Part shown: piece after piece, positions 7,489 through 52,675 of the stretch | Layout of the letters: each line of letters begins with the position of its first letter | Numbering within the stretch: the stretch's first letter is position 1 | IMG/VR virus record: IMGVR_UViG_3300043399_000272 | Span: 186,001 to 250,000 of that record | Direction: 5' to 3' (one strand) | Length of the DNA: 64,000 nucleotides | Notes under the pieces: model-generated | What the model was told of the DNA's origin: nothing | What the model saw: the letters and a program-made list of their open reading frames with translations, nothing else | The model's database searches: none | Position numbers and translations under genes: made by a program

Positions 7489-8078
7489 TGGCAACTAAAA
7501 AAGCAACTCCGTCAGAAGAAAAATTCGAGAAACAAGACTTTGATTTGTTCAAGGCTTTAGAAGCGATTGACAAGAAAGACTATTCATATTACGATAGACT
7601 GACAGAAGAACAGCAAAAGAAGTTCGTACCGTTTATGATGACTCACTGGATGAGCCAAATCAAAAGCAATGGTAGTATGCAGGGATATTACGTGCGTAGT
7701 GTTGATTATCACGCTAATCAACATTTATTCAATGAAAACGTGATGAAACATCCCAAACTACAGTGGCTAATGTTGTGTGCTAGTAGCCCTGATATGGGAA
7801 AGCAATTCCATCAATGGGTGCCGCACTTGTCTAGCAAAGTTGCTACATTGAAAGAAACACCCAAAGAACGTGAAATTAGAGAGTATTTTAGTAAAATTTA
7901 TCCTAAGGCAAGCGAAGCAAACCTATATGCTATAAGCGAAGCATATGTTACAGAACACAAGAAAAAATCATACCTAGCCAAAAGATTTGAAAATCTAAAA
8001 TACGAAGATATTGAAATATTAGCAAATTTAGTGACCGACGATGACATTCGTAGATATGAAGAAGACCGAGGAAATTGA
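7488..8078 (+). CDS. clamp loader small subunit (gp62-like)
   Basis: DLFKALEAI...FVPFMMTHWMS...ANQ...LQWLML pattern resembles gp62; a gp44 homolog lies at 54390. Confidence 0.5.
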   Translation: MATKKATPSEEKFEKQDFDLFKALEAIDKKDYSYYDRLTEEQQKKFVPFMMTHWMSQIKSNGSMQGYYVRSVDYHANQHLFNENVMKHPKLQWLMLCASSPDMGKQFHQWVPHLSSKVATLKETPKEREIREYFSKIYPKASEANLYAISEAYVTEHKKKSYLAKRFENLKYEDIEILANLVTDDDIRRYEEDRGN

Positions 8079-8754
8079 AACGAAACACAGTTGCGAATTC
8101 TGCAACCGAACATTCGTCAGAGAAAAAACTCTGTTCACCCACATGTGTGAGACAAAGAATAGATGGTTGTCAAAAGATAAAATTGCAAATAGAATAGGAT
8201 TTCAAAGTTTCGTTCAATTTTATAAAAAACATTCTGCTGCTAAAAAGACAAAAACATATGATGAATTCATTCGTAGTCCATACTACACAGCTTTTGTAAA
8301 GTTTGGAAATTATTGTAGTGATATCAATGCTATCAACATTTCTCGTTTTGTTGATTGGTTATTAGCAGAACAAGTGTCAATTGATAATTGGAATAGTGAT
8401 AAAGTATATACTAGGTATTTGATCGAATATCTTAGAAAAGAAGATCCAATGGATGCTATACATCGTAGTGTAGAAACGTCAATAGAATTAGTAAAATCTG
8501 AAGGTATTCTTCCTAAAGACTTGTTGAGATTCGGTAATACAAACAAGATTTGTTATGCAATAACTACTGGTAAGATTAGCCCTTGGATGTTGTATCAAAG
8601 TAAAAGTGGCCCTAAGTTTTTAGACACGTTACACCCTGACCAAGTTAAATTCATTATAGATTATATTGATCCAGAGCAATGGGCACTAAAATTTCACAGA
8701 GAGCCGGAAAATGTCAGAGCAGTCAAAGAAATCCTTGATGTTGGGGGGTATTGA
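8056..8754 (+). CDS. hypothetical protein with N-terminal Zn finger
   Basis: CEFC-x12-HMC. Confidence 0.65.
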   Translation: MKKTEEIETKHSCEFCNRTFVREKTLFTHMCETKNRWLSKDKIANRIGFQSFVQFYKKHSAAKKTKTYDEFIRSPYYTAFVKFGNYCSDINAINISRFVDWLLAEQVSIDNWNSDKVYTRYLIEYLRKEDPMDAIHRSVETSIELVKSEGILPKDLLRFGNTNKICYAITTGKISPWMLYQSKSGPKFLDTLHPDQVKFIIDYIDPEQWALKFHREPENVRAVKEILDVGGY

Positions 8755-8965
8755 TATTAATCATGATTATAGAGTAAGAATACCCTTTACAGTAGGGTTC
8801 ATGAGTGACGGCGAAATAAATATGTGGAATGAAACATGTGCTAGAGCAATCGAGATGTTCGGATTGCCGGGTGACAAATACACATGTAGATTTACTAAAG
8901 AAGCGATTGAGTTTTGGTTCTTAGAAGAAAAAGATGCTATGATTTTTGAGTTGACTTGTGGATAA
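8711..8965 (+). CDS. array member (LRW-motif family)
   Basis: EMFGLPGDKY...FWFLEEKDAMIFELTCG. Confidence 0.7.
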   Translation: MSEQSKKSLMLGGIDINHDYRVRIPFTVGFMSDGEINMWNETCARAIEMFGLPGDKYTCRFTKEAIEFWFLEEKDAMIFELTCG

Positions 8966-9218
8966 GTGTTTAGAGTTTATATTGCCTAGCGGAGCAGCAG
9001 GTATGGCAGCCGGCATGACTCGTCAAGCTATAGGTAAAAAAATCAGAAAATTACAAGAAGATAAAAAAATAGGTCAGTATAAAACTAAAACGACAGGATA
9101 TAGATTTAAGGTATGGTTTGAGAATGAAATTGACTACACTACTTTTTTCCTTGTTTGGGAAGCCATTAACTCTTGGCATAAACCTAAAATCATTGAAGAA
9201 GATTACGATCCGAATTAA
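8958..9218 (+). CDS. array member (LRW-motif family, extended C-terminus)
   Basis: VWFENEIDYTTFFLVW. Confidence 0.65.
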   Translation: MDKCLEFILPSGAAGMAAGMTRQAIGKKIRKLQEDKKIGQYKTKTTGYRFKVWFENEIDYTTFFLVWEAINSWHKPKIIEEDYDPN

Positions 9219-9621
9219 AGCTCTTATAAGAATATTAAAAGCAAATCGCAAACTCAAAAAGAGTGGTTACAATAATTGGGCACATTATAAACATAACCGT
9301 GACCCCGATGTCGAAAGGTATGCTAATTGCATAGATGACTTCTACAAGGGTTATCCATATATCTATGCTTGCCCAAACCCAAACCACTATGCATATCAAC
9401 ACATAGCCGATTATGGACCAGGTGGTGACATATATGGGTTTAATGAGATAGAATTTTGGTGTCACGAAAAAATAAGGTGGAACTTTCGTTGTGACATGCA
9501 TAGAGTTTATGAGAATCAATGGGGAAAAATTGAGTTCAATGATATCGGAGGTTATGATAGAATATACTTTGCTTTTAAACGTGAACAAGATTTTACACAC
9601 TTTTTATTGCGATGGGCCTAA
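9118..9621 (+). CDS. array member (LRW-motif family); true start may be TTG at 9193
   Basis: IEFWCHE...YFAFKREQDFTHFLLRWA. Confidence 0.7.
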   Translation: MRMKLTTLLFSLFGKPLTLGINLKSLKKITIRIKALIRILKANRKLKKSGYNNWAHYKHNRDPDVERYANCIDDFYKGYPYIYACPNPNHYAYQHIADYGPGGDIYGFNEIEFWCHEKIRWNFRCDMHRVYENQWGKIEFNDIGGYDRIYFAFKREQDFTHFLLRWA

Positions 9622-9854
9622 AAAGAATATACATAATGTATCATACACCTAGATCGATGGAAGTTCTTTCATGGTTTTATGATACATTCGGTGAACCTCA
9701 GGAATGGGGAGGTATAATGTCAGAGCCTGTTCAATTGAAAAGTGGATATCAGTGGGCCAATGGTCAACATTCTACTAATTATCATGATGAAGCTAGTCCA
9801 TGTATTTGGTGTACAGAACAAGCGTTTATGATGTATTCTCTAAGGTGGTTATAA
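9612..9854 (+). CDS. array member (LRW-motif family)
   Basis: WFYDTFGEP...EQAFMMYSLRWL. Confidence 0.7.
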   Translation: MGLKRIYIMYHTPRSMEVLSWFYDTFGEPQEWGGIMSEPVQLKSGYQWANGQHSTNYHDEASPCIWCTEQAFMMYSLRWL

Positions 9855-10108
9855 TGGAACAAGGTAGCTTTACATATAAAACAACTAATTACTATGGTAG
9901 TCAACGAAAGATTCACATCGTATCTTGGAAAGGTAAGGGTGAAGTTGACGGGGATGAAATCCGAAAGTGGTGTATTGAAAACTTCGGAAATCCAGGTTAT
10001 CAGGAAGAACATTCTCAAGCTCGATGGCTAGATGATATTAAAGATTCGGGTGAAATCTATCTGTGTAAAGATGAAGATTTGACCTTTTTCTTACTCAAGT
10101 GGACATGA
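9854..10108 (+). CDS. array member (LRW-motif family)
   Basis: KWCIENFGNPG...IYLCKDEDLTFFLLKWT; TAATG overlap with previous stop. Confidence 0.75.
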   Translation: MEQGSFTYKTTNYYGSQRKIHIVSWKGKGEVDGDEIRKWCIENFGNPGYQEEHSQARWLDDIKDSGEIYLCKDEDLTFFLLKWT

Positions 10109-10314
10109 TGTACGATGATTTGACCCATAGGGTATTTCTAAAATGTCCAACTACAGACACAGATACAGTTGACAGGTGGTGTTACGAACATTTTGGTGAA
10201 CAGGGTGACAAATGGGATGCTTGGTTCGCAGATGATAGTCTCTGGAATTATGACCAAATTTATGCTTTCGTTAACCACGAAGATGCAGTACTTTTTACTC
10301 TAACTTGGGTATGA
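10105..10314 (+). CDS. array member (LRW-motif family)
   Basis: RWCYEHFGEQGDKW...YAFVNHEDAVLFTLTWV. Confidence 0.75.
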   Translation: MMYDDLTHRVFLKCPTTDTDTVDRWCYEHFGEQGDKWDAWFADDSLWNYDQIYAFVNHEDAVLFTLTWV

Positions 10315-10544
10315 GAAGATTACATTTTGATGGCTCTACTTGGCATGATACCAAACCCGGTTGGCATGAAATTGAATTGAATTTGAACGGTCAACCAAAA
10401 CGCTATCGTGAAATACTAGAATGGCTGTATAATACTATAGACAAGCCGGAAAGGCATTGTAGGTGGTTCCAAACGTCTGTTGGAATCAAAATTAAATTTA
10501 GGTACGAACGAGATTTTATTATCGCAACATTGAGGTGGACATGA
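10311..10544 (+). CDS. array member (LRW-motif family)
   Basis: EWLYNTI...IKFRYERDFIIATLRWT. Confidence 0.75.
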   Translation: MRRLHFDGSTWHDTKPGWHEIELNLNGQPKRYREILEWLYNTIDKPERHCRWFQTSVGIKIKFRYERDFIIATLRWT

Positions 10545-10894
10545 GAGTAGGTGTTTGGTATCGTACAGAATTACAACAACCCCCTAAGTCAGGTTACTAC
10601 CTTAGCTACAGAGGATGGGGTATCGCTGGCAAGGCAGATGACGACAGCGATTGGGGTTATGTCTATTACGATAAGAAAATAAATGAGTGGCGTGATTATC
10701 AAAATGTTAGCAGTAGCTATGCTATTGTCTATTACTGGACTGACGCTACGCCTGATGATTGGGTAAATCAAGACCCACCCGGTGTCACATTACATAAAGT
10801 AAAAGAAGAACACAATGTAGCACTGGAAGATGCGTGGAAGAAAGTTCAGGAGGCAATCGACCAGTACAACATGATTAAAGAGTTGGTGCGATGA
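10541..10894 (+). CDS. unrelated small protein inside the array (DUF551-like W..PP.SGYYL pattern)
   Basis: Coupled ATGA start; lacks the LRW motif. Confidence 0.6.
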   Translation: MRVGVWYRTELQQPPKSGYYLSYRGWGIAGKADDDSDWGYVYYDKKINEWRDYQNVSSSYAIVYYWTDATPDDWVNQDPPGVTLHKVKEEHNVALEDAWKKVQEAIDQYNMIKELVR

Positions 10895-11265
10895 CAATAC
10901 AATTACACGACTATCAATTGTGCGTTTTAGAACACTTAAAGGGATGGAAGCCGGGCGAAATGATGCTTATCTCTACTCCTAGACAAACTGGTAAAACTTA
11001 TCTCAATCAATTATTCGGTAAAATGAGTAACAGACAAATTTTTATGATGGGACCAGAACCTAAGTATAAATTCAGTCGTGCCAACTGGTATCAAGCAGAA
11101 TTTGACTGGCGAAAGTATGATGAAGTTGAAGAATGGTGCGAACAACAGTTTGGGCCGCACCCACAGAGACCAGATGCGTGGAGTCGCTGGTGGCATAAGT
11201 TTGAGAATAGCATTCTGTTCCGTGACGAAAAAGACTATGTATTGTTCATGTTGAGGTGGTCGTGA
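10891..11265 (+). CDS. array member with terminase-like P-loop fragment at N-terminus
   Basis: LHDYQ...PRQTGKT then EWCEQQFG...ILFRDEKDYVLFMLRWS. Confidence 0.75.
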   Translation: MTIQLHDYQLCVLEHLKGWKPGEMMLISTPRQTGKTYLNQLFGKMSNRQIFMMGPEPKYKFSRANWYQAEFDWRKYDEVEEWCEQQFGPHPQRPDAWSRWWHKFENSILFRDEKDYVLFMLRWS

Positions 11266-11507
11266 TGTTTATTCACACATACCAACAACAGGAGGATTGG
11301 AGAGATCCCGTACCCTGGTTTGTTGCTGCATTTACGACACCTAAGGAAAATCGTAAAGAGATTACCAAATGGTGTTACAAAACTTTTGGTGCCCCTAGTA
11401 TGAATCATCTTACTAAACAGATTCGTTGGAAAGATAGTATTCAATACGGTGAAATATATTTCAGTAATCAAAAAGACCTGGAGTGGTTTGTACTGAGGTG
11501 GTCATGA
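11265..11507 (+). CDS. array member (LRW-motif family)
   Basis: KWCYKTFG...IYFSNQKDLEWFVLRWS. Confidence 0.75.
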   Translation: MFIHTYQQQEDWRDPVPWFVAAFTTPKENRKEITKWCYKTFGAPSMNHLTKQIRWKDSIQYGEIYFSNQKDLEWFVLRWS

Positions 11508-11710
11508 CTATGCACAAAGTTGTTTATGCTCAAACTACAGATGGCACACTGTCTGCGTATCAGCGTAGCTATAAAGACCACCTAGTAGACGAATGGCTTA
11601 AAGAATATTGTAAAGGCCCTTACTATCATAACCCGGGCTGGACTACAGAAAAGTTTATTGAGTTTGAACGCAATGAAGATGCGTTTTGGTTTGCGTTAAG
11701 GTGGTGTTGA
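11504..11710 (+). CDS. array member (LRW-motif family)
   Basis: EWLKEYC...IEFERNEDAFWFALRWC. Confidence 0.75.
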   Translation: MTMHKVVYAQTTDGTLSAYQRSYKDHLVDEWLKEYCKGPYYHNPGWTTEKFIEFERNEDAFWFALRWC

Positions 11711-11952
11711 TGAATAACATTTCAGTTCATAATCTTATCGACAATCATATTATCAACTATCTTAGAGAGATTGATAAGCCCAGTAGAACATATTGGCCCT
11801 ATCTAATTCAGCTAAAATCTTGGGCTGACGTAAGCCCTGCTGAAAGATTCTGCTATACCCACTTCAAGAGTCGAAACTGGAGAAATATCAGCGCCGATTT
11901 TTATTTCAAACATAAAGAAGATTATGAATGGTTTATGTTAAGGTGGTCTTGA
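11710..11952 (+). CDS. array member (LRW-motif family)
   Basis: RFCYTHF...FYFKHKEDYEWFMLRWS. Confidence 0.75.
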   Translation: MNNISVHNLIDNHIINYLREIDKPSRTYWPYLIQLKSWADVSPAERFCYTHFKSRNWRNISADFYFKHKEDYEWFMLRWS

Positions 11953-12131
11953 TGGAAACAAATATTGTATATAGAGCTATGGCAGCAGGCAACTGGGATG
12001 AAAAAGTCGAATGGTGCAGAGAAAACTTGTATCCTGGAGGACACTATGAACCAAAATGGTATATGCGTTATCCTTGGATAGAATTTGATGATGAAAAAGA
12101 ATATATCTGGTTCAAGTTGAGGTGGGAATGA
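11952..12131 (+). CDS. array member (LRW-motif family)
   Basis: EWCRENL...IEFDDEKEYIWFKLRWE. Confidence 0.75.
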   Translation: METNIVYRAMAAGNWDEKVEWCRENLYPGGHYEPKWYMRYPWIEFDDEKEYIWFKLRWE

Positions 12132-12328
12132 GCCTAATTGACGATATCGATGATTTGATGTGGCCAGTATTTGTCAAGTTTGATAAAGCATTGGTTCCTG
12201 ACGAATGGTACGAACTAGATTGCTGGTGTAATCAGCAGTTTGGTAAAGATGGTTGGTGGCTTGAGAAAGGTGTCATGCGTCTTAGAAAAGAAGAACATGC
12301 TACAATATTCTTACTAAGATGGGGTTAA
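12128..12328 (+). CDS. array member (LRW-motif family)
   Basis: CWCNQQFGKDGWW...RLRKEEHATIFLLRWG. Confidence 0.75.
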   Translation: MSLIDDIDDLMWPVFVKFDKALVPDEWYELDCWCNQQFGKDGWWLEKGVMRLRKEEHATIFLLRWG

Positions 12329-12528
12329 TAGTTACAAAGTACATTTATGAAAATTTTGATACCGACGCCGCGGTAGAGTGGGCCATAGAAAATTGTCCTA
12401 GTTTTGAAAAGTACATGATAATAGAACTAGACTGGGAAGAAAAAGAAGATTTGGGTTGTTGGTTTAAATTTGAGGTATATTTTGGTGACGAAAAAGATGC
12501 AATGTTTTATTCATTGAGGTGGGCGTAA
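12319..12528 (+). CDS. array member (LRW-motif family)
   Basis: EWAIENC...VYFGDEKDAMFYSLRWA. Confidence 0.7.
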   Translation: MGLIVTKYIYENFDTDAAVEWAIENCPSFEKYMIIELDWEEKEDLGCWFKFEVYFGDEKDAMFYSLRWA

Positions 12529-12747
12529 TTGATTGAAGTGACATTAGAAGATAAATTACCTAGTGAGTTTTTAGAAATTGTTAGAGAAATTAAAGACAAA
12601 GGGTATGTTCAGGGAACTGACTTTGACTTTGCTTACCATCCACCCAAATTTGATAACTTTTCAGGGGATGCAGTGTATAATAGATGCGTCATATTCAAAT
12701 TTTATAAAGAAGAAATTGCAACATGGTTCAACCTAAAGTATCTTTGA
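12529..12747 (+). CDS. array member (LRW-motif family, LKY variant)
   Basis: FKFYKEEIATWFNLKYL; TTG start right after previous stop. Confidence 0.7.
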   Translation: MIEVTLEDKLPSEFLEIVREIKDKGYVQGTDFDFAYHPPKFDNFSGDAVYNRCVIFKFYKEEIATWFNLKYL

Positions 12748-12995
12748 TGGATGAAATAATCAAAGAAAAATTAGAAGAAATGGAAAAAAGTATAGACAAC
12801 GATGTGATGAGGTCTTGTCTAGTCGAAGGTGGATGGACAGAAATTAAATTTCATTATCACAGTGGTAAACACGCAGTTGATGTGTTAGAATGGTGCGGTG
12901 AAACGTTTAAAGAAAATCAATGGTCGAGACTGAATGGTTACTTTGTATTTCGCAAGAAAAAAGATGCTGAATGGTTTATGTTAAGGTGGCTATGA
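12747..12995 (+). CDS. array member with acidic N-terminal helix
   Basis: EEMEKSIDNDVMRSCL...EWCGETF...FVFRKKKDAEWFMLRWL. Confidence 0.75.
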   Translation: MDEIIKEKLEEMEKSIDNDVMRSCLVEGGWTEIKFHYHSGKHAVDVLEWCGETFKENQWSRLNGYFVFRKKKDAEWFMLRWL

Positions 12996-13333
12996 AAATC
13001 ATATGGGGAAGAAGCATAGGATGGAATATTTCCTATAATAATTACAGAAGCATACTGAAATACGCCGGCGATAATAATTTCGATATCACCCATAAAAATA
13101 TTAAAATGGAATATACTATAATAGAAAACGGTGCAGACTGCTATCCCTGGATGGAATACTTTGCGATATTACCTAGAAAAACAGTGACAGGTAAACGCAT
13201 ATGGTGGCAGAAAGCATATAAGCGTAAAGTATGGGTAGTGTGGGGCATAGGCTTTCACATGGAACCACATGTACAATATGCAACAGCCTTTGATTTGTTA
13301 ATGTATGACAACAACTATAACACTAAAAGGTAA
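12992..13333 (+). CDS. small protein, paralog of 32538-32762
   Basis: FAILPRKTVTGKRIWWQKAYKR...YATAFDLL. Confidence 0.65.
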   Translation: MKIIWGRSIGWNISYNNYRSILKYAGDNNFDITHKNIKMEYTIIENGADCYPWMEYFAILPRKTVTGKRIWWQKAYKRKVWVVWGIGFHMEPHVQYATAFDLLMYDNNYNTKR

Positions 13334-13526
13334 TTTAACTGGTGAACAAGAACAATGGCTCGCAAAGAATATCGGGCCTAGGATGCATTACATTCACAAT
13401 AGTATAGGTGGTCAAGGTTGGATAGCAAGACACGAATGGAAACCTGGAATGGTTTCTAAGTATTGGAATCTTTCTATTGAAGATGACCGTCTCGCTACAT
13501 TTTTTGTACTGATGTTCCCGCAATGA
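13305..13526 (+). CDS. array member (divergent)
   Basis: QWLAKNIG...GW...SIEDDRLATFFVLMF. Confidence 0.65.
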   Translation: MTTTITLKGNLTGEQEQWLAKNIGPRMHYIHNSIGGQGWIARHEWKPGMVSKYWNLSIEDDRLATFFVLMFPQ

Positions 13527-13867
13527 TAGAAAATCATCCTTTTAAAATTACAGAGTACGACAGGTTTGTAACTGTGACTTGGCCTGCTTTTCATGACATA
13601 CGAGACAAAATGACTAAAGTAAAATTAGTTGAGGCAGCATTTCAGCAATCTAAAGCAGTTGAGGTCGGGTTTGTATTAGAACTCAATAACAAAGAATATG
13701 ATATCATGTGGATCAATTCTTTTCTTAGTTTAACTCAAAATGATTATGTGCATTATGTACAAGACATGTATGTGATTAGAGGTGTTGCTTATAGAGATAA
13801 GCAAGACGCAGAAAAGTTATATAATTGGTTAGAAGGAAAGTATATATGGCAGCTATTAAAGGACTAG
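13523..13867 (+). CDS. hypothetical protein (possible divergent array member)
   Basis: VAYRDKQDAEKL. Confidence 0.6.
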   Translation: MIENHPFKITEYDRFVTVTWPAFHDIRDKMTKVKLVEAAFQQSKAVEVGFVLELNNKEYDIMWINSFLSLTQNDYVHYVQDMYVIRGVAYRDKQDAEKLYNWLEGKYIWQLLKD

Positions 13868-14100
13868 GAAGTTTTCAACCAATGATTGAGTATGTTGATG
13901 TGGTTCGTAATAACACGGATTACACCTCAAAGAAAACGTATATCCCTAAGCCCAATGATTCAGATGAACACATTAGATGGTGCCGCAGAAATTTAGGAGC
14001 TAGGGGTGATGGTTGGGACTTTGCAGGTTCTGGTAAAACGTTGACTATTTTTATTTGGTCACACAAATTGCAATTTATGTATGAAATGTGGCAACAATAG
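13825..14100 (+). CDS. array member (divergent)
   Basis: RWCRRNLGARGDGWDF...FMYEMW. Confidence 0.65.
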   Translation: MVRRKVYMAAIKGLGSFQPMIEYVDVVRNNTDYTSKKTYIPKPNDSDEHIRWCRRNLGARGDGWDFAGSGKTLTIFIWSHKLQFMYEMWQQ

Positions 14101-14924
14101 TGAAGAATAAAATAGGTATTGATATCGGCAAAACCAAAACTGAATGCTGTGTCATTTCACTTAACAACGAAGTGTTGTTTCGTGAAAGATTACCTACAGG
14201 TACCGTCTTTAATGAAATAAAAGAATTGTATCAAAAGGCTATCAAATACACAGATACAACGAATCACACCATCGGTGTGTGTATGCCGGGAAAATTAAGC
14301 AACGTTAGTGGGTTAATGATTAATTCTAGTATTGAATTTTTGAATAATACTGACTTTGTAAAAAATCTACAACTTGTTTTAAACCATGATTTTAAAACAG
14401 CAAATGATTCACAATGTTTTGCATTAGCAGAAGCATTACTAGGGGCAGGGAAAAATTATAATATTGTTTATGGCTTAATATTGGGCACTGGCGTGGGCGG
14501 GGGCATCGTAATAAACGGTAGAAGTACACAAAGCGAGTTTGGTCACACTAGTCTAGATAGTTCAAACAAAATACTATGTAGATGTAAGAGAATTGGTTGC
14601 GTTGAAACATGGCTCAGTGGCTCAGGTGTCGATGTATGGGCAAAAGAATTGTTAGGGATCGATATGTCTACTGTAGACTATATGAAAGATCCCAAAGTAA
14701 AGCAGATATACTTTGAAAAGTTTGGATTAGCTCTATCTAATTTAATTCAAACAGTTAATCCAGAATGTATTGTAATCGGTGGTGGAATCAGTAATAATAG
14801 TGAAGTATATTCCGTAGGTGTAGAGCGCATCAAACAAAAGTTGTTTGATGATGAATTGTCTATACCTGTAGTCAAAGCAGAACTAGGAGATAGTGCAGGC
14901 GTTATAGGTGCTGCACTTTTATAA
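14088..14924 (+). CDS. ROK-family sugar kinase
   Basis: GIDIGKT, NDSQCFALAE, LGTGVGGG, EFGH, CxC..GCxE Zn site, IGGG, AGVIGAA. Confidence 0.88.
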   Translation: MATIVKNKIGIDIGKTKTECCVISLNNEVLFRERLPTGTVFNEIKELYQKAIKYTDTTNHTIGVCMPGKLSNVSGLMINSSIEFLNNTDFVKNLQLVLNHDFKTANDSQCFALAEALLGAGKNYNIVYGLILGTGVGGGIVINGRSTQSEFGHTSLDSSNKILCRCKRIGCVETWLSGSGVDVWAKELLGIDMSTVDYMKDPKVKQIYFEKFGLALSNLIQTVNPECIVIGGGISNNSEVYSVGVERIKQKLFDDELSIPVVKAELGDSAGVIGAALL

Positions 14925-14926
14925 TT

Positions 14927-15496
14927 ATGGCAAATGATATAATGATTGACCTTGAAACACTTGACACGACACCGTATTGTGTAATTCTCACAATCGGTGC
15001 AGTCAGGTTCGATCCTAGAGGTCAAGGAGTGGTTGAACGATTAGAACTACGTCCTACGATTGAGGATCAAACAGAAATTCATAATAGAATAATTGATGAT
15101 GACACATTACGGTGGTGGTCTACACAGAGCCCTGATGCACTTGAAGAAGCATTGGGAGACAGGGGACGTACATCATTTAGAGAGTGCATGGAGGCCCTTT
15201 ATAAGTTTTGTTGGAACCGTCGTGCTGTTTGGGCTAATGGTTCTGCATTTGATATCGTAGCATGTGAAACAGGTATGCGTCAGACATTGACTGATTATCC
15301 TAATCCTATTCCGTGGCCATTCTGGACAGTTAGAGATACACGAACACTGTATGAAGTAGCAGGTGTTAGTTTGAAGGATAAGAAATACGGTAGCAAAACA
15401 ACGCACAAAGCAGTCGAAGATGCAGAACACCAAGCGATTGTTGTGCAAGACGCATACATGAAATTGATGAAAGCAGGATTGGCAACACCGCGATGA
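14927..15496 (+). CDS. DEDDh 3'-5' exonuclease (Rv2179c/exodeoxyribonuclease VIII-like)
   Basis: MIDLETL, WANGSAFD, RDTRT, HKAVEDA. Confidence 0.85.
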   Translation: MANDIMIDLETLDTTPYCVILTIGAVRFDPRGQGVVERLELRPTIEDQTEIHNRIIDDDTLRWWSTQSPDALEEALGDRGRTSFRECMEALYKFCWNRRAVWANGSAFDIVACETGMRQTLTDYPNPIPWPFWTVRDTRTLYEVAGVSLKDKKYGSKTTHKAVEDAEHQAIVVQDAYMKLMKAGLATPR

Positions 15497-15954
15497 AAAC
15501 ATACGGTGAATTATTACCTGGCTTAAAGATCATTGAACATACAAAGTACAATGATAATAGAGGTAATTTTTGTGAAACATGGAAGATAACAAATGATGGG
15601 ATGCGAGGATCGTTCCGTCAATTGAACACTGCAACATCTAAACAAAATGTCATTCGTGGTATGCACAGACAAGACCAATCTAAGTTGATTATGCCTGTTT
15701 ATGGTAGAATATTTGACGTTGCACTAGAACCTGAAACTGGTAAGTGGTTTGCGATTGAATTAGACAACACCTCAGGTTTATTAGTACCACCAGAATACGC
15801 ACACGGTTACATGACATTAACTGAAAACACGATAGTGCAGTATATTGTAGACATGCCCTATAATAAAGACGTTGAAGAAAATTTCAAATGGGATCAATAT
15901 AACATCGCTTGGCCAATCGTTGTTACACCCATACTATCAGAGAAAGACAAATGA
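15493..15954 (+). CDS. rmlC: dTDP-4-dehydrorhamnose 3,5-epimerase
   Basis: DNRGNFCE, RGMH, AHGY, ILSEKD cupin motifs. Confidence 0.85.
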   Translation: MKTYGELLPGLKIIEHTKYNDNRGNFCETWKITNDGMRGSFRQLNTATSKQNVIRGMHRQDQSKLIMPVYGRIFDVALEPETGKWFAIELDNTSGLLVPPEYAHGYMTLTENTIVQYIVDMPYNKDVEENFKWDQYNIAWPIVVTPILSEKDK

Positions 15955-16442
15955 AAGTAGGATTTAATTGTTCAAGTTTTGATTTGTTTCATGCTGGGCA
16001 TGTTACCATGCTTAAAATGGAAAAAAAGTTATGTGACTATCTAATTGTTGCACTTCAAGTTGATCCTACTATTGATAGGCCTGGCATCAAAAATAAACCT
16101 ACACAATCTGTCTATGAACGATACGTACAATTGCAGTCATGTAAATATGTAGACGAGATACTAGTATATTCTACCGAATATGACCTACTTCAATTATTGA
16201 TGACCCAAAAGATCGACATTCGTTTTTTGAGTGAAGAATATCTTAACAGAGATTTCACGGGCAAGCAATATTGCATTCAAAATGGAATCGAGTTATACTA
16301 TCACAAACGTGAACATGATTATAGTTCAACCGAGTTGCGTAACAGAATATATATGTTAGAAAAACTCAAGCGTGAAACAACTCAACCAGAAACAGAGATA
16401 CCGCAACACAGTCCTGAATTGGTTAAAAAGAATGAAATTTAA
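15951..16442 (+). CDS. cytidylyltransferase (TagD/glycerol-3-phosphate CTase-like)
   Basis: FDLFHAGH (HxGH), ER...SCKYVDE, SSTELR. Confidence 0.85.
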   Translation: MKVGFNCSSFDLFHAGHVTMLKMEKKLCDYLIVALQVDPTIDRPGIKNKPTQSVYERYVQLQSCKYVDEILVYSTEYDLLQLLMTQKIDIRFLSEEYLNRDFTGKQYCIQNGIELYYHKREHDYSSTELRNRIYMLEKLKRETTQPETEIPQHSPELVKKNEI

Positions 16443-17013
16443 TAGTGACATTGACATTGATTTTAGTAACCGTGATGATATACTAAAGCATATCAGGCAC
16501 ATACCTGCAGCCATGCGTAATGTTAATCCAATTCGTAAACATGCGACTGGAATCTATGTGACAGACATTCCATATGATGCAGTGAATGACATGGCTAACA
16601 TTGATTATGTAGAAGCAGAGGATCGTGGATATATTAAGTTAGATATGCTTAATGTGCATGTATATAATCAAGTCAAAGACGAAATGCACTTAATCGAGTT
16701 GATGCGTGAGCCTGACTGGAATAAGTTAAAAGATCGAGAATTTGTTGAAAAACTGATACACTTGTCAAATCACTACAATAGTCTTTGCAAAATGCCAGAA
16801 CCAGTTGACAGTATTCCTAGACTAGCTATGTTTTTGGCTATTATTCGTCCAGGAAAAAAGCATTTAATTGGTCTGCCCTGGAAAGAAGTAGCTAAAACTG
16901 TATGGGAAAAAGGAAGTGACGGGTATAGCTTCAAAAAAGCACATGCAATTGGGTATTCTTGGTTAGTAGCAGTTCATATGAACTTGCTTACAGAATCTTC
17001 TTCACAAGGGTAA
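16432..17013 (+). CDS. miniature DNA polymerase III alpha (DnaE), C-terminal catalytic half
   Basis: SDIDIDF, KHATGIYV, GYIKLDML, LAIIRPG and GYSFKKAHA occur in DnaE order within 193 aa. Confidence 0.85.
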   Translation: MKFNSDIDIDFSNRDDILKHIRHIPAAMRNVNPIRKHATGIYVTDIPYDAVNDMANIDYVEAEDRGYIKLDMLNVHVYNQVKDEMHLIELMREPDWNKLKDREFVEKLIHLSNHYNSLCKMPEPVDSIPRLAMFLAIIRPGKKHLIGLPWKEVAKTVWEKGSDGYSFKKAHAIGYSWLVAVHMNLLTESSSQG

Positions 17014-17377
17014 TTGATTTTCTTTTAGATTTCTTTTTACTGAGTTCAAGCATACTACATATAGGTCCGTGTAATACTGTCAAACTCTTATTGTTAAATG
17101 TTCTTAAGTAGGGCTTAAAGATAGCCCAGTCTTCTTTTAGAAACATATTAATGGGTACTAATCTGTTTGATTCCCACCACCAAACATCCCCTAATAACAA
17201 AAATTGCTCTCTTAACTCTTGTTGTGCTATAGATCCATAATCATATATAGTGGTGACTAAATCATCACGGTTTTGTACTATACCAACATAATCTTGGCCA
17301 GCATAGGAACAAACGGTGATGAATGGGTGATTTTCTGTTAGTTTTTTAAAGAAATCGTTATGAAGCATAAAAATCAA
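16988..17377 (-). CDS. hypothetical protein (late)
   Basis: 129 aa ORF; GATAAATA on minus strand at 17386-17393. Confidence 0.7.
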   Translation of the reverse strand: MIFMLHNDFFKKLTENHPFITVCSYAGQDYVGIVQNRDDLVTTIYDYGSIAQQELREQFLLLGDVWWWESNRLVPINMFLKEDWAIFKPYLRTFNNKSLTVLHGPICSMLELSKKKSKRKSITLVKKIL

Positions 17378-44551: not shown

Positions 44552-47500
44552 ATGGCTCAACAATACATAGACTTTGGTACATTTCCAAACGATCCATCGG
44601 CTGATCCGATTCGATCAGCATTTCAGAAAATAAACGAAAACTTCAATGAACTTTACGGTACTTTTTTCTCGTCCGGTGTTACATCTATTACCACTACTGG
44701 TGGTATTACAGCTCCGGCAGGAGGAACAGGGGACGTATTAATTGAGGGTAATTTCCCTAGAATTCAGATTATTACAGGTAGTAATTTAACAGTTGGAGCA
44801 GGTGCACCTAACACTACCCAGTCAGCAAATATCACTACCTTTTCTGTTCCGTTTTATTTAGATTTAGCTAATTCGATTAATACACAATCAGCTACTTTTA
44901 CAACAGGTGTAACTACATCTAATCTTAGCGTAGGCAACGTAGTAACTAGCTCATTAATTCCCAATGCATCTACCGGTCAATTAGGAAATAGTACCAATAG
45001 ATGGGGTAATTTATTTGTTACTTCTAATATAAATTTAGGAGCAGCAGCCAATAGTCAAACGATTAGATCAAACACTTCAGGTGTAATTCTAACTAATCTT
45101 TTTGTAACATCAAACACTGTAATAGGTAATGCTAACATCACCGGATTAGTTACTGCAGGCAATGCTACTGTGACAGGTCTAACGACTACAAATAATTTAA
45201 CAGTAACTGGAAATTTGATCGGTAACTTAATTCCTGATCAAGACGAAGTTTATAATTTAGGTAGCCCCACACGTAAGTTTAAAGAATTATTTCTTGCTGC
45301 GAATACTTTGACATTGGGTGCAGTTACAATATCAGCAGACTCAAATAGCATTATTGTTCCTAATTTATCAGTCACTGACACAATCAGTGTAGGTACGATA
45401 ACTGCAGGATTTGTCGACGGTATAATAACTGCAACATCACAACCATTAATTACTAGTTTGGGCGCATTAAGCAACTTGACTGTTGCTGGTTGTGTAGCGA
45501 TTGGTAATACATTAATTGATTCTAACGGGGCAATCACAGTAGGTAGTACAGTTATTGATCCTTCCGGTAACATTATACTACCGGCTAATGGTACAATTAC
45601 TGGAACAGTTATTACTCCACCGGGCGGAACAGTTAGTGCTCCGGGTTCTAATACACAAATCTTATTCAATGATGACGGTAACTTAGCAGCAGTTCCAGGA
45701 CTACAATTCAACAAAGTAACTAGTTTATTAAGTATTTCAGGTAATGTAGCAGGAGGAAACTTAGTATCTTCAGGTGCTCTATCAGTTACTGGTAACGGTA
45801 GTGTAGGCGGCACATTTAGTGCTACTGGAAATGTGAACGCTGGCAATTTAATTACCTTAGGTGTTTTAAGTGCTAGCGGCAATATTTCAGGCGGTAATAT
45901 TTCAACTAATGGATTCTTACAAGTAGTAGGCAATGCTAGTTTGGGCAATATTACAACAACTAGAATAGATGGTACTATAGTTAGTGTATCGGGTAATATT
46001 TCAGGCGCTAACTTAATTGCTAGCGGTATAATGCGAGTAGACGGTAACGCAAACGTAGGTAACCTAACTACTAGTGGTTTAGTGTCAGCCGCAACAATAA
46101 ATGCATCAGGAAATGTGTCTGCTGGTAATATTAGTGTTTCCGGATCACTAGCAGTTGACACATTATCAGGAAATAACTTAAGTTCTAGTGGCAACTTAAC
46201 TGTTACCGGTAATTCTTCTTTAGCAAATGCAATAGCTACAAGTCTATCTGCTATAGGTAATATTTCAAGTAGTAATTTAAATATTACCGGTAATTCTTCT
46301 TTAGCAAATGCAATAGCTACAAGTCTATCTGCTATAGGTAATATTTCAAGTAGTAACTTAATCATCACTGGTAATTCTACACTAGCTAATGCATTGGCTG
46401 CGAGTCTTGCAGCTACGGGTAATGTTTCAGGTGGAAACATATTGACTGGTGGACTAATTAATGCTACTGGTAATATATTAGGTGGTAACTTATCCACCAC
46501 TGGTGTAGTTTCTGCTACAGGTAATGTTTCAGGTGGCAATATAACAACTACAGGGTTAATCACTGCGAATGGCACCATCGTCGGCGGCAATCTATCCACT
46601 GCTGGTGTAGTTTCTGCTACAGGTAATGTTTCAGGTGGAAACTTAACTACAAACGGATTAATTGTAGCTACAGGCAATGTCTCAGGTGGTAACTTATCTA
46701 CTACAGGTGTAGTCTCTGCTACAGGTAATATATTAGGTGGTAACTTATCTACTACAGGTGTAGTCTCTGCTACAGGTAATATATTAGGTGGTAACATTAA
46801 TGCTAACGGTAGCGTTACAGGTAACTTGTTTAGTGCTAATTTCTTCAGCGGTGATGGAAACAGCATAACAAACTTGAATGCGTTAAATGCTAAGAATAAG
46901 ATTGTGCCAACTGGTTTATTAATTGGTTCAGGAACAGCAACTATAACTTTCTCTACGCAATCTTTTGCCCCGTTTGATATTGGACAAACAGTAAATGTTT
47001 CAAACATTTTACCAAGTGGATTAAACGGTTCACAGACCATTACGTTCTGCAACGCAGACACATTAACATTTAGTACTGCACTAACCTCAAACGTTGGATT
47101 TGTGCCAGGTACATCAATAGTATCAGGTGACATTAAAGTTTCAAGTGCTATAAGTGCTGCTTCGGCAAATACTGCTAATTCTGCGAATACTGCTAACTCA
47201 GCAACGATTGCTGGACAAGTTACAGGTGCAACACAAGGAAACATCACAAGTGTAGGAACTTTAGTAGGATTGACTGTTGCTCCAACTGGATCAATAACCG
47301 GTGCTAATACTATTTCAGGTAATTTTATTTCAGGTAATTTTGTTCTTGCAAGTGTTACTAGTGGCATCGTTGCTTCTGGTACTACTCAAAGCACCGCATA
47401 TCCGTTGATTAGTCAATATAATGTTGTTTCTACTTCTAGTACAGGAACTGCTGATGGTGTACGTTTACCAACAGCTACAGTGGGTATGCAAGTTATTATC

Positions 47501-52132: not shown

Positions 52133-52161
52133 TTGCTTTTTTGTAATAAGTCTGCTAAACT
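52133..52161 (+). promoter_or_regulatory. sigma70-like promoter with extended -10 for the DnaE N-half
   Basis: TTGCTT-17-TAAACT with TGn. Confidence 0.5.
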
Positions 52162-52168
52162 AGTAGCA

Positions 52169-52675
52169 ATGAAAACTGACCAGTATAGCCGACAGATTTT
52201 ATCAGAAGATGATTTGTGTGACATTTTCCTACGAAATCCAGAACACAAACTATCAACGGTATTAACCGATACAGTAATACATTTTCATCCAGATTTAGAA
52301 TTAAATAATACTTTTCATACAACAGAACCTACTACACAAACTATCAGCGTGTCAGAATTTGATGATATAAATCAATCAACATGGTTTATGCCTGATGAAT
52401 ATAAGTCAATGGATATTGCTAAATATCTTTTAGATTTATGCACCTCAGATGAAGAATTACAGCGTGTAGGTAAAGAACTTATTCTTTATCAAGAAAGGAA
52501 TATGTTTCCCTTGCTTAGATTCTGCAAATACTTGGTAGACACAATGAGAGCTAATAATGTAGTATGGGGAGTAGGTAGGGGAAGCAGTGTTAGTAGTTAT
52601 GTACTGTTTTTGCTAGGAGTACATAAGATAAATTCAATATATTACGATTTGGATGTAGAAGAATTTTTAAAATAA
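52169..52675 (+). CDS. miniature DNA polymerase III alpha (DnaE), N-terminal half
   Basis: RV.KEL..Y, YLVD, VWGVGRGSSVSSYVLFLLGVHKINSIYYDL.VEEFL matches DnaE GPGRGSAAGSLV.Y.LGIT.IDP..YDLLFERFL. Confidence 0.85.
   Translation: MKTDQYSRQILSEDDLCDIFLRNPEHKLSTVLTDTVIHFHPDLELNNTFHTTEPTTQTISVSEFDDINQSTWFMPDEYKSMDIAKYLLDLCTSDEELQRVGKELILYQERNMFPLLRFCKYLVDTMRANNVVWGVGRGSSVSSYVLFLLGVHKINSIYYDLDVEEFLK

What the first reader, a model, noticed from the sequence alone, without database searches (positions are those of the whole stretch)
14088..17013. Sugar-activation genes interleaved with a 3'-5' exonuclease and the mini-DnaE catalytic half in one coupled operon
Seen in sequence: ROK kinase, DEDDh exonuclease, RmlC epimerase, cytidylyltransferase and the DnaE C-half overlap or abut one another, directly after the LRW array. 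Established: kinase, NTP-transferase and epimerase are steps in making NDP-sugars or NDP-polyols, and DEDDh nucleases serve as the separate proofreading subunit (epsilon) of DnaE. Inference: either a glycosylation or DNA-modification precursor pathway, possibly feeding the odd polymerase, or a proofreader paired with the mini-DnaE. A phage-borne ROK kinase is itself unusual.
Basis: partly seen in the sequence, partly recalled or inferred. Interest (0 to 1): 0.6.

Follow-up and report, generated by a model that had tools for sequence, protein, structure and literature searches.

The report
Sugar genes inserted beside phage exonuclease
In this uncultured freshwater jumbo phage, three sugar-activation genes sit in a gene-insertion hotspot around a conserved exonuclease that lies next to half of the phage's split mini DNA polymerase III; relatives carry the sugar genes only here and there, so they are ordinary accessory genes and not part of the polymerase.

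Summary
Window 14088-17013 carries five tightly coupled + strand genes: a ROK sugar kinase, an Rv2179c/DexA-type DEDDh exonuclease, an RmlC-like cupin, a TagD/HldC-like cytidylyltransferase-family enzyme, and the Mg/template-binding half of the split minimal Pol III alpha already known from group 2.2 jumbo phages.

- **Sugar genes are sporadic.** In 82 related loci, CTPt, RmlC and ROK were each found in only a minority (16, 7 and 5 of the first 80). On a replication-gene tree, RmlC and ROK change state about as often as shuffled labels.
- **Cultured relatives lack the cluster.** PA5oct, Phosso and Vibrio phage 2.275.O have none of the four genes next to the polymerase half.
- **The slot holds other sugar genes.** In other relatives it carries a true RmlB and other SDR genes. 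The CTPt gene is 74% identical to a cyanophage gene that sits beside an RmlB. The genome also has glycosyltransferases and sulfotransferases elsewhere.

The likeliest role is NDP-6-deoxyhexose supply for glycan modification.

The exonuclease is the conserved neighbour (73 of 79 loci that could be judged). However, PA5oct and the Vibrio phage lack it, and a co-fold gave no verdict. A proofreader role stays possible but unlikely.

The parts
8041..8754 (+). Conserved upstream anchor: a 237-aa zinc-finger plus helical protein (phrog_11058). In PA5oct it lies directly upstream of the polymerase half.
   Evidence: PHROG; tblastn; invariant C18/C21/H34/C36; model pLDDT 86.7; no Foldseek match.
8711..14100 (+). 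At least 9 belong to one paralogous family. It fills the first part of the 7.7-kb insertion between the two conserved anchors.
   Evidence: ORF list; self-BLAST; clustering; no Pfam family.
14088..14924 (+). ROK-family sugar kinase, 278 aa (alternative start GTG 14100). It resembles Mak (fructo/mannokinase) and NagK but is not an equivalog of any named kinase. It has no N-terminal DNA-binding domain.
   Evidence: PF00480 166.9 bits. NCBIfam fructokinase 164.7 bits against cut-off 443, NagK 136.5. PDB 2ap1, 7p7i, 4db3. Homologues of 55-72% identity occur only on metagenome contigs; in the ones looked up they again lie as ROK-EXO-polymerase half.
14927..15496 (+). DEDDh 3'-5' exonuclease of the Rv2179c/T4 DexA family, 189 aa. 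It is the conserved neighbour of the polymerase half in this clade.
   Evidence: PF16473 114.4 bits; PF00929 only 18.5 bits against cut-off 24. phrog_255. 508 phage records including T4-like dexA. PDB 8kel. D8/E10/D109/H160/D165 conserved in 45 sequences. Present in 73 of 82 loci.
15493..15954 (+). RmlC-like cupin, 153 aa: a predicted NDP-4-keto-6-deoxy-sugar 3,5- or 3-epimerase.
   Evidence: PF00908 113 bits. TIGR01221 111.7 bits against cut-off 155.75. 32 PDB RmlC-type chains, best 7pvi E 1e-22. Found in only 7 of 80 related loci.
15951..16442 (+). Cytidylyltransferase-family (HIGH-motif) nucleotidyltransferase, 163 aa, TagD/HldC-like. Predicted to form an NDP-sugar.
   Evidence: PF01467 51.8 bits. 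rfaE_dom_II 66.4 and TagD 44.2 bits, both below cut-off. phrog_7878. PDB ECT and TagD. 74% identical to the 'TagD' of Synechococcus phage S-B43, which sits next to a 4,6-dehydratase. HAGH motif read.
16432..17013 (+). C-terminal (Mg2+ and template-binding) half of the split minimal DNA polymerase III alpha, 193 aa.
   Evidence: phrog_11778 E 8e-54. Homologues in 96 jumbo-phage records. Invariant D6/D8/D10/D71. VIA-align top 7 hits are all C-family polymerases, Z 7.5-5.2, mapping to E. coli alpha 554-781. Described by Iyer et al. 2021, PMC7824862.
16988..17377 (-). Conserved 129-aa gene of unknown function. It is convergent with the polymerase half and overlaps its 3' end by 26 nt. It marks the downstream edge of the unit.
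   Evidence: tblastn hits in all 80 loci and in PA5oct, Phosso and the Vibrio phage; no Pfam family.
52133..52675 (+). N-terminal (NTP-binding) half of the split minimal Pol III alpha, 35 kb downstream of its partner.
   Evidence: PF07733 36.6 bits against cut-off 23.9; phrog_11127 E 4e-44.

Best explanation
The cluster is a mosaic, not one pathway.

Two conserved replication-module genes are immediate neighbours in PA5oct: the zinc-finger protein (window 8041-8754) and the C-half of the split mini Pol III alpha (window 16432-17013). In this freshwater jumbo-phage clade they bracket an insertion hotspot. The simplest form of the slot holds only a DexA/Rv2179c-type 3'-5' exonuclease that abuts the polymerase half.

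In this phage the slot has grown to 7.7 kb. It contains an array of small ORFs, a ROK hexose kinase just upstream of the exonuclease, and an RmlC-like epimerase plus a TagD/HldC-like nucleotidyltransferase wedged between the exonuclease and the polymerase half.

I read the three sugar genes as accessory (auxiliary metabolic) genes that support an Rml-like route to an NDP-6-deoxyhexose:
1. The ROK kinase phosphorylates a hexose.
2. A host mutase would make the sugar-1-phosphate.
3. The nucleotidyltransferase makes the NDP-hexose.
4. A 4,6-dehydratase acts next. This is the host's enzyme, or the phage SDR at G000 173648-174610.
5. The cupin epimerase acts on the 4-keto intermediate.
6. A reductase finishes the sugar.

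The product would feed the phage's own glycosyltransferase, sulfotransferase and methyltransferase island (G000 56-69 kb). That island would remodel a host surface glycan or decorate virion proteins.

The exonuclease most likely does what DexA-type enzymes do in many phages, that is trim DNA or oligonucleotide 3' ends for salvage, repair or recombination. Its position next to the polymerase half is mainly inherited gene order.

The tight overlaps reflect the compact, same-strand packing of the whole module.

Shown: domain identities, junctions, distribution in relatives, and the existence of the hotspot. Inferred: substrates, order of steps, target of the sugar, and co-transcription.
For: **Hotspot**
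- In PA5oct the homologue of window 8041-8754 lies directly upstream of the polymerase half. In the Vibrio phage one small ORF separates them, and in Phosso three. None has ROK, EXO, RmlC or CTPt within 7 kb.
- In 54 IMG/VR loci with both anchors, the slot ranges from 550 bp (exonuclease only: L056, L069, L070, L082) to 8.8 kb, in 37 different gene orders.
- Homing-type EndoVII/HNH genes flank the exonuclease in several loci.

**Sporadic sugar genes**
- CTPt is in 16, RmlC in 7 and ROK in 5 of the first 80 loci.
- State changes on a DnaEc+primase+DnaB tree: ROK 4 (shuffle mean 4.9), RmlC 6 (5.8), CTPt 8 (10.2). Exonuclease absence takes only 3 changes (6.7; 0 of 200 shuffles reach it).
- ROK occurs as ROK-EXO-polymerase half without RmlC or CTPt in four other lineages (L067 type, L108, L109/L110).

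**Rml-like chemistry**
- Other relatives carry, in the same slot, an RmlB equivalog (TIGR01181 373.8 bits against cut-off 365.1) plus CTPt plus a second SDR-like gene.
- CTPt is 74% identical to the cyanophage S-B43 'TagD', which is followed by a 4,6-dehydratase (51% identical to the relatives' RmlB) and two further SDR genes.
- No RmlA-type NTP_transferase exists in G000, G001 or G002. CTPt is therefore the only candidate NDP-sugar-forming enzyme found with the family models tried (RmlA-type NTP_transferase PF00483; PF01467 on the cluster genes).

**Consumers**
- G000 56-69 kb holds a GT1/GT4 glycosyltransferase, two sulfotransferases, 2OG oxygenases and methyltransferases.

**Not DNA-directed**
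- The ThyA homologue is a true thymidylate synthase (349.2 bits against cut-off 327).

**Known precedent**
- Iyer et al. 2021 (PMC7824862) describe jumbo-phage sugar clusters with kinases, HIGH-superfamily NTases, cupin isomerases and GTases.
- Phapecoctavirus phages carry adjacent RmlA and RmlC genes.

**Composition**
- The cassette genes have the same GC and GC3 as their neighbours.
Against: - No enzyme was assayed. CTPt is below the equivalog cut-off for both HldE domain II and TagD, and its best PDB sequence matches are phospho-alcohol cytidylyltransferases (ECT, TagD). It could therefore make CDP-glycerol or a similar compound instead of an NDP-hexose.
- ROK kinases normally phosphorylate O6, so a mutase is needed, and I did not search for one.
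- G000 is only 74% complete. No clear 4,6-dehydratase or 4-reductase was found in it.
- RmlC and CTPt co-occur in 5 of 7 RmlC-bearing loci. A phylogeny-aware test of this is not significant.
- ROK shows no association with either gene, so it may not belong to the same route.
- The exonuclease-polymerase adjacency is strongly conserved in the clade. That could mean more than inherited order.
Confidence: 0.6

Rival explanations
1. Proofreader pairing. The exonuclease is a separate editing subunit for the split mini Pol III alpha, which has no PHP or exonuclease domain. This would be analogous to epsilon with E. coli alpha. On this reading the sugar genes are passengers inserted into a functional exonuclease-polymerase gene pair.
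For: - The exonuclease lies upstream of the polymerase half in 73 of 79 loci that could be judged, and abuts it (40 nt or less) in 44.
- Its absence is phylogenetically clustered: 3 changes against a shuffle mean of 6.7.
- DEDDh residues are invariant or nearly so in 45 sequences.
- The mini polymerase keeps only palm and fingers.
- One of three co-fold runs scored 0.33. The job as a whole gave no verdict, so this does not count as evidence.
Against: - The family is Rv2179c/DexA, not DnaQ. PF00929 scores 18.5 bits against a cut-off of 24.
- It occurs in 508 phage records, against only 96 records with a homologue of the polymerase half; the hits include T4-like and much smaller phages.
- PA5oct and Vibrio phage 2.275.O have the mini polymerase and no such exonuclease. 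In Phosso it lies 107 kb away.
- One clade replaces it with a PsiE-like gene.
- Epsilon binds the PHP domain, which is absent here.
- Complete relatives encode a family B polymerase, which in T4-like phages has its own editing domain (the editing domain is general knowledge, not tested).
- Unrelated genes and homing endonucleases are tolerated between the two genes.
Confidence: 0.17
2. DNA or nucleotide modification. The kinase, nucleotidyltransferase and epimerase make an activated sugar or polyol that is attached to phage DNA or to a dNTP used by the unusual polymerase.
For: - The genes are embedded in the replication module.
- PA5oct-type phages are reported to carry hypermodified DNA, predicted to be 7-deazaguanine (PMC12191111).
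- Sugar-modified phage DNA is an established phenomenon (T4 glucosyl-hmC; general knowledge).
Against: - The sugar genes are missing from most close relatives that share the same polymerase.
- The pyrimidine enzyme present is a true thymidylate synthase, not a hydroxymethylase.
- The one clear glycosyltransferase sits in an island with sulfotransferases, 2OG oxygenases and methyltransferases, typical of polysaccharide tailoring.
- The PA5oct modification is attributed to deazaguanine genes, not sugars.
Confidence: 0.06
3. Three unrelated host-metabolism boosters. Each sugar gene acts alone on a host pathway, with no shared product. The ROK kinase captures free hexose or GlcNAc for energy and precursors. 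The TagD-like enzyme makes CDP-glycerol or a similar head-group donor. The cupin boosts the host's dTDP-rhamnose supply.
For: - The three genes occur in relatives in nearly every combination, including each one alone.
- ROK shows no association with CTPt.
- CTPt's closest solved homologues use phospho-alcohols.
- The cyanophage literature treats the cytidylyltransferase as a stand-alone AMG of unclear role (PMC9146016).
Against: - CTPt recurs next to RmlB, RmlC or SDR genes in this slot and in cyanophage S-B43. That is hard to explain if it makes CDP-glycerol.
- RmlC is with CTPt in 5 of 7 RmlC-bearing loci.
Confidence: 0.17

Closest known systems
Jumbo-phage and cyanophage nucleotide-sugar gene clusters (Iyer et al. 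2021, PMC7824862; Synechococcus phage S-B43 TagD-RmlB-SDR cluster)
   Same: - HIGH-superfamily (cytidylyltransferase-like) NTase, cupin sugar isomerase/epimerase, SDR dehydratases, a sugar kinase, and glycosyltransferases elsewhere in the genome.
- Sporadic and polymorphic between related phages.
- CTPt is 74% identical to the S-B43 gene.
   Different: - The kinase here is ROK, not PfkB. No PfkB is present.
- The set in this phage is partial: no dehydratase or reductase in the cassette.
- It sits inside the replication module, between an exonuclease and a polymerase piece, not in a glycan island.
Bacterial dTDP-L-rhamnose pathway RmlA-RmlB-RmlC-RmlD, and the adjacent RmlA and RmlC genes annotated in Phapecoctavirus coliphages
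   Same: An NTase and a 3,5-epimerase encoded side by side without the other steps. Relatives carry a true RmlB in the same slot.
   Different: - The NTase belongs to the PF01467 family, not the RmlA/PF00483 family.
- RmlC scores below the equivalog cut-off (111.7 against 155.75).
- The nucleotide and sugar used are unknown.
Split minimal DNA polymerase III alpha of group 2.2 jumbo phages (Iyer et al. 2021)
   Same: - Two stand-alone proteins encoded far apart, here 35 kb.
- The C-half has the metal-binding aspartates and a fingers-like helical domain.
- It is accompanied by a family B polymerase in complete relatives.
   Different: Nothing essential. The new detail is that in this freshwater clade a DexA-type exonuclease is the usual upstream neighbour of the C-half.
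Phage T4 DexA / Mycobacterium Rv2179c 3'-5' exonucleases
   Same: Same Pfam family (PF16473). DEDDh residues are kept. It is a stand-alone protein of about 190 aa and is widespread in phages.
   Different: Only about 22% identity to T4-like dexA. The fixed position next to a polymerase gene is specific to this clade.
E. coli Pol III alpha-epsilon (DnaE-DnaQ) proofreading pair
   Same: A DEDDh exonuclease encoded separately from a C-family polymerase that lacks its own active editing domain.
   Different: - Different exonuclease family (PF00929 below cut-off).
- No PHP domain for epsilon to dock on.
- Co-occurrence is not universal.
- No support from co-folding (no verdict).

Membership tests
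ROK family (PF00480) sugar kinase | Whole-protein match to the ROK profile above the gathering score | tested here: met
   166.9 bits against 22.9, covering profile positions 2-290 of 294.
ROK family (PF00480) sugar kinase | Kinase type rather than repressor type: no N-terminal DNA-binding domain | tested here: met
   The ROK domain starts at residue 9 of 278. NagC and Mlc regulator models match only from their position 82 or 128 onward.
ROK family (PF00480) sugar kinase | ATP-binding DxGxT motif and Cys/His zinc motif | tested here: inconclusive
   Read from the translated sequence: GIDIGKTK near the N-terminus and H...CRCKRIGCVE. This fits the motif except that K stands where the consensus has G. 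It was not checked on a structure.
Named hexose kinases (Mak fructokinase NF007108, NagK NF009835) | Score above NCBIfam equivalog cut-off | tested here: not met
   164.7 against 443 for Mak, and 136.5 against 380 for NagK. The substrate is therefore open.
Rv2179c-like / DexA exonucleases (PF16473) | Profile match above the gathering score, with DEDDh residues conserved | tested here: met
   114.4 bits against 27. D8 is nearly invariant; E10, D109, H160 and D165 are invariant in 45 sequences. The profile hits PDB 8kel at E 2e-8.
DnaQ / epsilon proofreading subunit | Membership of the RNase_T/DnaQ family (PF00929) | tested here: not met
   18.5 bits, below the cut-off of 24. No NCBIfam match.
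DnaQ / epsilon proofreading subunit | Constant co-occurrence with its polymerase | tested here: not met
   Absent from PA5oct and Vibrio phage 2.275.O, which encode the mini polymerase. It lies 107 kb away in Phosso. It is absent from 6 of 79 clade loci that could be judged.
DnaQ / epsilon proofreading subunit | Physical binding to the polymerase | tested here: inconclusive
   Co-fold of the exonuclease with the C-half: ipSAE 0.33, 0.08 and 0.01, verdict 'no answer'.
dTDP-4-dehydrorhamnose 3,5-epimerase RmlC (PF00908 / TIGR01221) | Domain match above the Pfam gathering score | tested here: met
   113 bits against 27. 32 PDB chains of the RmlC type were matched.
dTDP-4-dehydrorhamnose 3,5-epimerase RmlC (PF00908 / TIGR01221) | Equivalog-level score (same substrate and reaction) | tested here: not met
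   111.7 against 155.75. GDP-heptose 3-epimerases and other 3-epimerases also match.
Cytidylyltransferase-like HIGH nucleotidyltransferases (PF01467) | Domain match above the gathering score, with an H-x-G-H motif | tested here: met
   51.8 bits against 21. HAGH was read in the sequence.
TagD (glycerol-3-phosphate cytidylyltransferase) or HldE domain II (heptose-1-phosphate adenylyltransferase) | Equivalog-level score | tested here: not met
   TagD 44.2 against 165.4. rfaE_dom_II 66.4 against 181.5.
ADP-heptose pathway (GmhA, HldA/HldE kinase, GmhB, HldC) | Presence of the heptose isomerase and the PfkB kinase | tested here: not met
   No SIS_2 and no PfkB match in G000 or in the complete relatives G001 and G002.
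C-family DNA polymerase (Pol III alpha) palm/fingers, split minimal form | Fold of the palm-fingers region | tested here: met
   Residues 66-192 align to PolC 3f2b (Z 7.5), Mtb DnaE1 5lew (7.4), E. coli alpha 5fku residues 554-781 (6.7) and Taq 2hpi (6.6). The next unrelated chain scores Z 3.8. The Z values are moderate, and residues 1-73 were modelled poorly.
C-family DNA polymerase (Pol III alpha) palm/fingers, split minimal form | Catalytic aspartates conserved | tested here: met
   D6, D8, D10 and D71 are invariant in 45 sequences and in PA5oct, Phosso and the Vibrio phage. Equating them with E. coli D401, D403 and D555 is inference.
C-family DNA polymerase (Pol III alpha) palm/fingers, split minimal form | Sequence-profile match to Pol III alpha | tested here: inconclusive
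   The C-half has no Pfam hit and no PDB hit with its profile. The partner N-half matches PF07733 above the cut-off. PHROG names both 'DNA polymerase'.

The most novel reading that the evidence does not exclude
In this freshwater clade of group 2.2 jumbo phages, the DexA-type exonuclease has been recruited as a trans-acting proofreader for the split minimal Pol III alpha. It would give a PHP-less, two-piece C-family polymerase an editing function through a non-DnaQ exonuclease. The gene pair would be a functional unit, repeatedly invaded by mobile sugar genes and homing endonucleases.
Probability: 0.15. Interest if true: 0.6.

Novelty: new member of a known kind. Interest (0 to 1): 0.3.

Why it matters
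The result removes an attractive but unsupported idea, that sugar activation feeds an odd polymerase. In its place is a concrete picture: a recombination hotspot inside the replication module of abundant freshwater jumbo phages, where Rml-like sugar genes are swapped in and out.

Three points may be useful to specialists:
- A ROK kinase is a recurrent phage accessory gene. It has no PHROG family and almost no cultured-phage homologues.
- A TagD-like nucleotidyltransferase repeatedly replaces RmlA next to RmlB or RmlC in phages. This suggests an unassayed route to NDP-6-deoxyhexoses.
- A DexA-type exonuclease is the fixed neighbour of the mini Pol III half in one clade. This gives a testable, though unlikely, candidate for its missing editing activity.

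Tried and rejected
- **Megablast of the region against 50,697 phage records:** no match. The phage is uncultured. Its source is a freshwater metagenome.
- **Co-fold of the exonuclease with the polymerase C-half**, using 45-row alignments: ipSAE 0.33, 0.08 and 0.01, verdict 'no answer'. This is neither support nor evidence against.
- **Foldseek against the PDB:** nothing at E 0.001 or better for the C-half model or for the zinc-finger neighbour. Only the exhaustive VIA-align search recovered C-family polymerases for the C-half.
- **HMM profile of the C-half against PDB sequences:** no hit at E 1 or better.
- **Sigma-70 promoter scan:** 55 sites against 52.5 expected. No informative terminator inside the cluster. 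The operon claim rests on spacing only.
- **ADP-heptose route considered and set aside:** no GmhA-type SIS_2 and no PfkB in G000, G001 or G002.
- **NAD-salvage NMN adenylyltransferase reading of the PF01467 gene considered and set aside:** no NadD, NadR or NMNAT model was among the NCBIfam hits, and the gene keeps company with RmlB, RmlC and SDR genes.
- **Family B polymerase not found in G000.** I first took this as a possible absence. Complete relatives have it about 68 kb downstream of the polymerase half, which would lie beyond the end of this 74%-complete record.
- **Literature search** for viral fructokinase auxiliary genes in freshwater: no paper.
- **Not used:** Read laying, because no RNA run held the stretch, and the large representative protein search, because word search and family scans sufficed.

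Full report
**Source and setting.** The window is bases 186001-250000 of a 260,148-bp IMG/VR virus record, estimated 74% complete. The only runs that hold most of the stretch are freshwater metagenomes. A second IMG/VR contig carries an identical copy. Megablast finds nothing in 50,697 phage records. Protein searches place the phage among group 2.2 jumbo phages such as PA5oct, RaK2, Atu_ph07 and Phosso. The surrounding genes are a T4-like replication/recombination module: UvsX, UvsY, a helicase, a primase and DnaB.

**Observation.**
- ROK kinase, 14088-14924: PF00480, 166.9 bits.
- Rv2179c-like DEDDh exonuclease, 14927-15496: PF16473, 114.4 bits.
- RmlC-like cupin, 15493-15954: PF00908, 113 bits.
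- Cytidylyltransferase-like enzyme: PF01467, 51.8 bits.
- A protein of phrog_11778, 'DNA polymerase': E 8e-54.

Reading the DNA moves two starts to ATG 15951 and ATG 16432. The junctions are then a 2-nt spacer, two ATGA overlaps and an 11-nt overlap.

The last protein is the metal- and template-binding half of the split minimal Pol III alpha that Iyer et al. described for group 2.2 jumbo phages (PMC7824862). D6, D8, D10 and D71 are invariant. Residues 66-192 of the model align best to seven C-family polymerases, Z 7.5-5.2, mapping to E. coli alpha 554-781, against Z 3.8 or less for the rest. The other half lies 35 kb away at 52133-52675 (PF07733, 36.6 bits).

**Cultured relatives.** In PA5oct the homologue of window 8041-8754, a zinc-finger helical protein of phrog_11058, sits directly upstream of the polymerase half. 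In the Vibrio phage one small ORF separates them, and in Phosso three. None of ROK, exonuclease, RmlC or CTPt lies within 7 kb. Window 8754-16432 is therefore a 7.7-kb insertion between two conserved neighbours.

**Uncultured relatives.** An alignment-based scan of IMG/VR found 522 loci that encode the polymerase half. I examined the best 80, at 70-85% identity, plus ROK-bearing metagenome contigs found separately, two of which were added to the tallies (82 loci in all).
- The downstream order is constant: antisense 129-aa gene, structural protein, primase, DnaB.
- The upstream slot varies from 550 bp to 8.8 kb, in 37 different gene orders.
- Its minimal form is zinc-finger gene, exonuclease, polymerase half.
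- The exonuclease is present in 73 of 82 loci. It is absent in 6 loci that have enough upstream DNA, and 3 loci cannot be judged. It abuts the polymerase half in 44.
- In the first 80 loci, CTPt is present in 16, RmlC in 7 and ROK in 5.

On a tree of polymerase half plus primase plus DnaB, RmlC needs 6 changes for 6 presences and ROK needs 4 for 5. These are the same as shuffled labels. CTPt needs 8, slightly fewer than the shuffle mean of 10.2. Exonuclease absence needs only 3 (shuffle mean 6.7). The window's nearest relative, L013, has the exonuclease only.

**What else fills the slot.** Between the exonuclease and the polymerase half, other relatives carry:
- a 307-aa SDR that passes the equivalog cut-off for dTDP-glucose 4,6-dehydratase (373.8 against 365.1 bits), together with CTPt and a second, weakly SDR-like 262-aa gene;
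- CTPt plus that 262-aa gene;
- RmlC plus CTPt, in either order;
- RmlC alone;
- EndoVII/HNH homing-type endonucleases.

Upstream of the exonuclease one finds ROK, a PhyH dioxygenase, methyltransferases or HNH genes.

CTPt is 74% identical to the 'TagD' of the unrelated Synechococcus phage S-B43. That gene is followed by a 4,6-dehydratase (51% identical to the relatives' RmlB) and two more SDR genes. The recurring company of RmlB, RmlC and SDR genes argues that this PF01467 enzyme makes an NDP-hexose, taking the place of RmlA. No RmlA-type NTP_transferase, PfkB kinase or GmhA exists in G000 or in two complete relatives of 359 and 367 kb.

The substrate remains unproven. The enzyme is below the cut-off for both HldE domain II and TagD, and its nearest solved homologues use phospho-alcohols.

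**Possible consumers of the sugar.** G000 has a GT1/GT4 glycosyltransferase, two sulfotransferases, 2OG oxygenases and methyltransferases at 56-69 kb. It also has a generic NDP-sugar SDR at 173,648-174,610, next to a true thymidylate synthase. This looks like glycan tailoring of the kind Iyer et al. describe for jumbo phages and cyanophages, not DNA glycosylation.

**ROK.** It matches no PHROG family. Of the 22 INPHARED records with a hit, 20 are unannotated, mostly short sequences and 2 are annotated E. coli phage records. About 28 metagenome protein clusters share 52-72% identity. The next tier, at about 40-46% identity, includes proteins named ROK family from freshwater bacteria such as Methylopumilus and Cytophagaceae. 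In the contigs I looked up, the order is again ROK, exonuclease, polymerase half, with no RmlC or CTPt. The kinase is thus a recurrent accessory gene of this slot. It is not tied to the other two sugar genes, and its substrate is open, because the Mak and NagK models are far below their cut-offs.

**Exonuclease.** It belongs to the family of T4 DexA and Mycobacterium Rv2179c. It occurs in 508 phage records, and its DEDDh residues are conserved. Its steady position beside the polymerase half keeps the proofreader idea alive. Several facts argue against it:
- PA5oct and the Vibrio phage have the mini polymerase without this exonuclease, and in Phosso it is 107 kb away.
- One clade replaces it with a PsiE-like gene.
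- Complete relatives carry a family B polymerase.
- The PHP domain that anchors epsilon is missing from the mini polymerase.

The co-fold gave no verdict. I put the proofreader reading at about 0.15-0.2.

**Verdict.** The cluster is real and tightly packed, but it is a mosaic. A conserved exonuclease-polymerase-half gene pair sits in an insertion hotspot. In this lineage the hotspot has collected a ROK kinase, an RmlC-like epimerase and a TagD/HldC-like nucleotidyltransferase. The sugar genes most likely contribute to an Rml-like NDP-6-deoxyhexose supply for glycan modification. They are not linked to the polymerase.

All the parts belong to known kinds. The modest new points are the ROK kinase as a recurring phage accessory gene, the RmlA-replacing role suggested for the TagD-like enzyme, and the clade-specific exonuclease neighbour of the mini Pol III half.

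Noticed in passing
window 8711-14100: About 20 small (60-125 aa) overlapping + strand ORFs. At least 9 belong to one paralogous family, which has 156 members in 47 related loci. Copy number and order differ in almost every relative. No Pfam or PHROG family matches.
   Followed up: partly
window 8041-8754: A 237-aa protein with an invariant C-C-H-C zinc finger and a confident all-helical model (pLDDT 86.7). It is always the upstream anchor of the slot. In PA5oct it is the immediate neighbour of the polymerase half. Foldseek finds no match in the PDB. It may be an unrecognised replication factor.
   Followed up: partly
window 16988-17377 (- strand): A 129-aa gene convergent with the polymerase half, overlapping its 3' end by 26 nt. 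It is conserved in all 80 IMG/VR loci and in PA5oct, Phosso and the Vibrio phage. It matches no family.
   Followed up: partly
L013:8382-9029, L014:9582-10004, L048 and L058 (cluster c24): EndoVII/HNH homing-type endonuclease genes lie immediately beside the exonuclease in several relatives. In L048, L053 and L058 a short exonuclease fragment precedes the intact copy. Endonuclease-driven exchange may explain the hotspot.
   Followed up: partly
G000:C1:56000-69000 (outside the window; locus L106): A glycan-tailoring island: two sulfotransferases, a 608-aa GT1/GT4 glycosyltransferase, a 2OG-Fe(II) oxygenase, a DUF6445 protein, weak GT-A-like hits and a Methyltransf_24 protein.
   Followed up: partly
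L037, L046, L049 (cluster c37, e.g. L049:9561-10001): In one sub-clade a PsiE-like (phosphate-starvation-inducible) 146-aa gene occupies the place of the exonuclease, directly upstream of the polymerase half.
   Followed up: no
window 45250-47367 (- strand), inside 44552-47662 (+ strand): A 705-aa open frame runs antisense within a 1036-aa ORF that has no PHROG match. This is unusually long for a chance antisense frame.
   Followed up: no
window 15951-16442 versus Synechococcus phage S-B43 (L090:5001-5486): The cytidylyltransferase gene is 74% identical at protein level to genes of T4-like cyanophages. More than 120 metagenome protein clusters share 79-91% identity with it. This points to exchange between unrelated phage lineages.
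   Followed up: partly
window 59191-61464: A 757-aa Lon-like ATP-dependent protease (phrog_4871, E 5e-232) is encoded by the phage.
   Followed up: no
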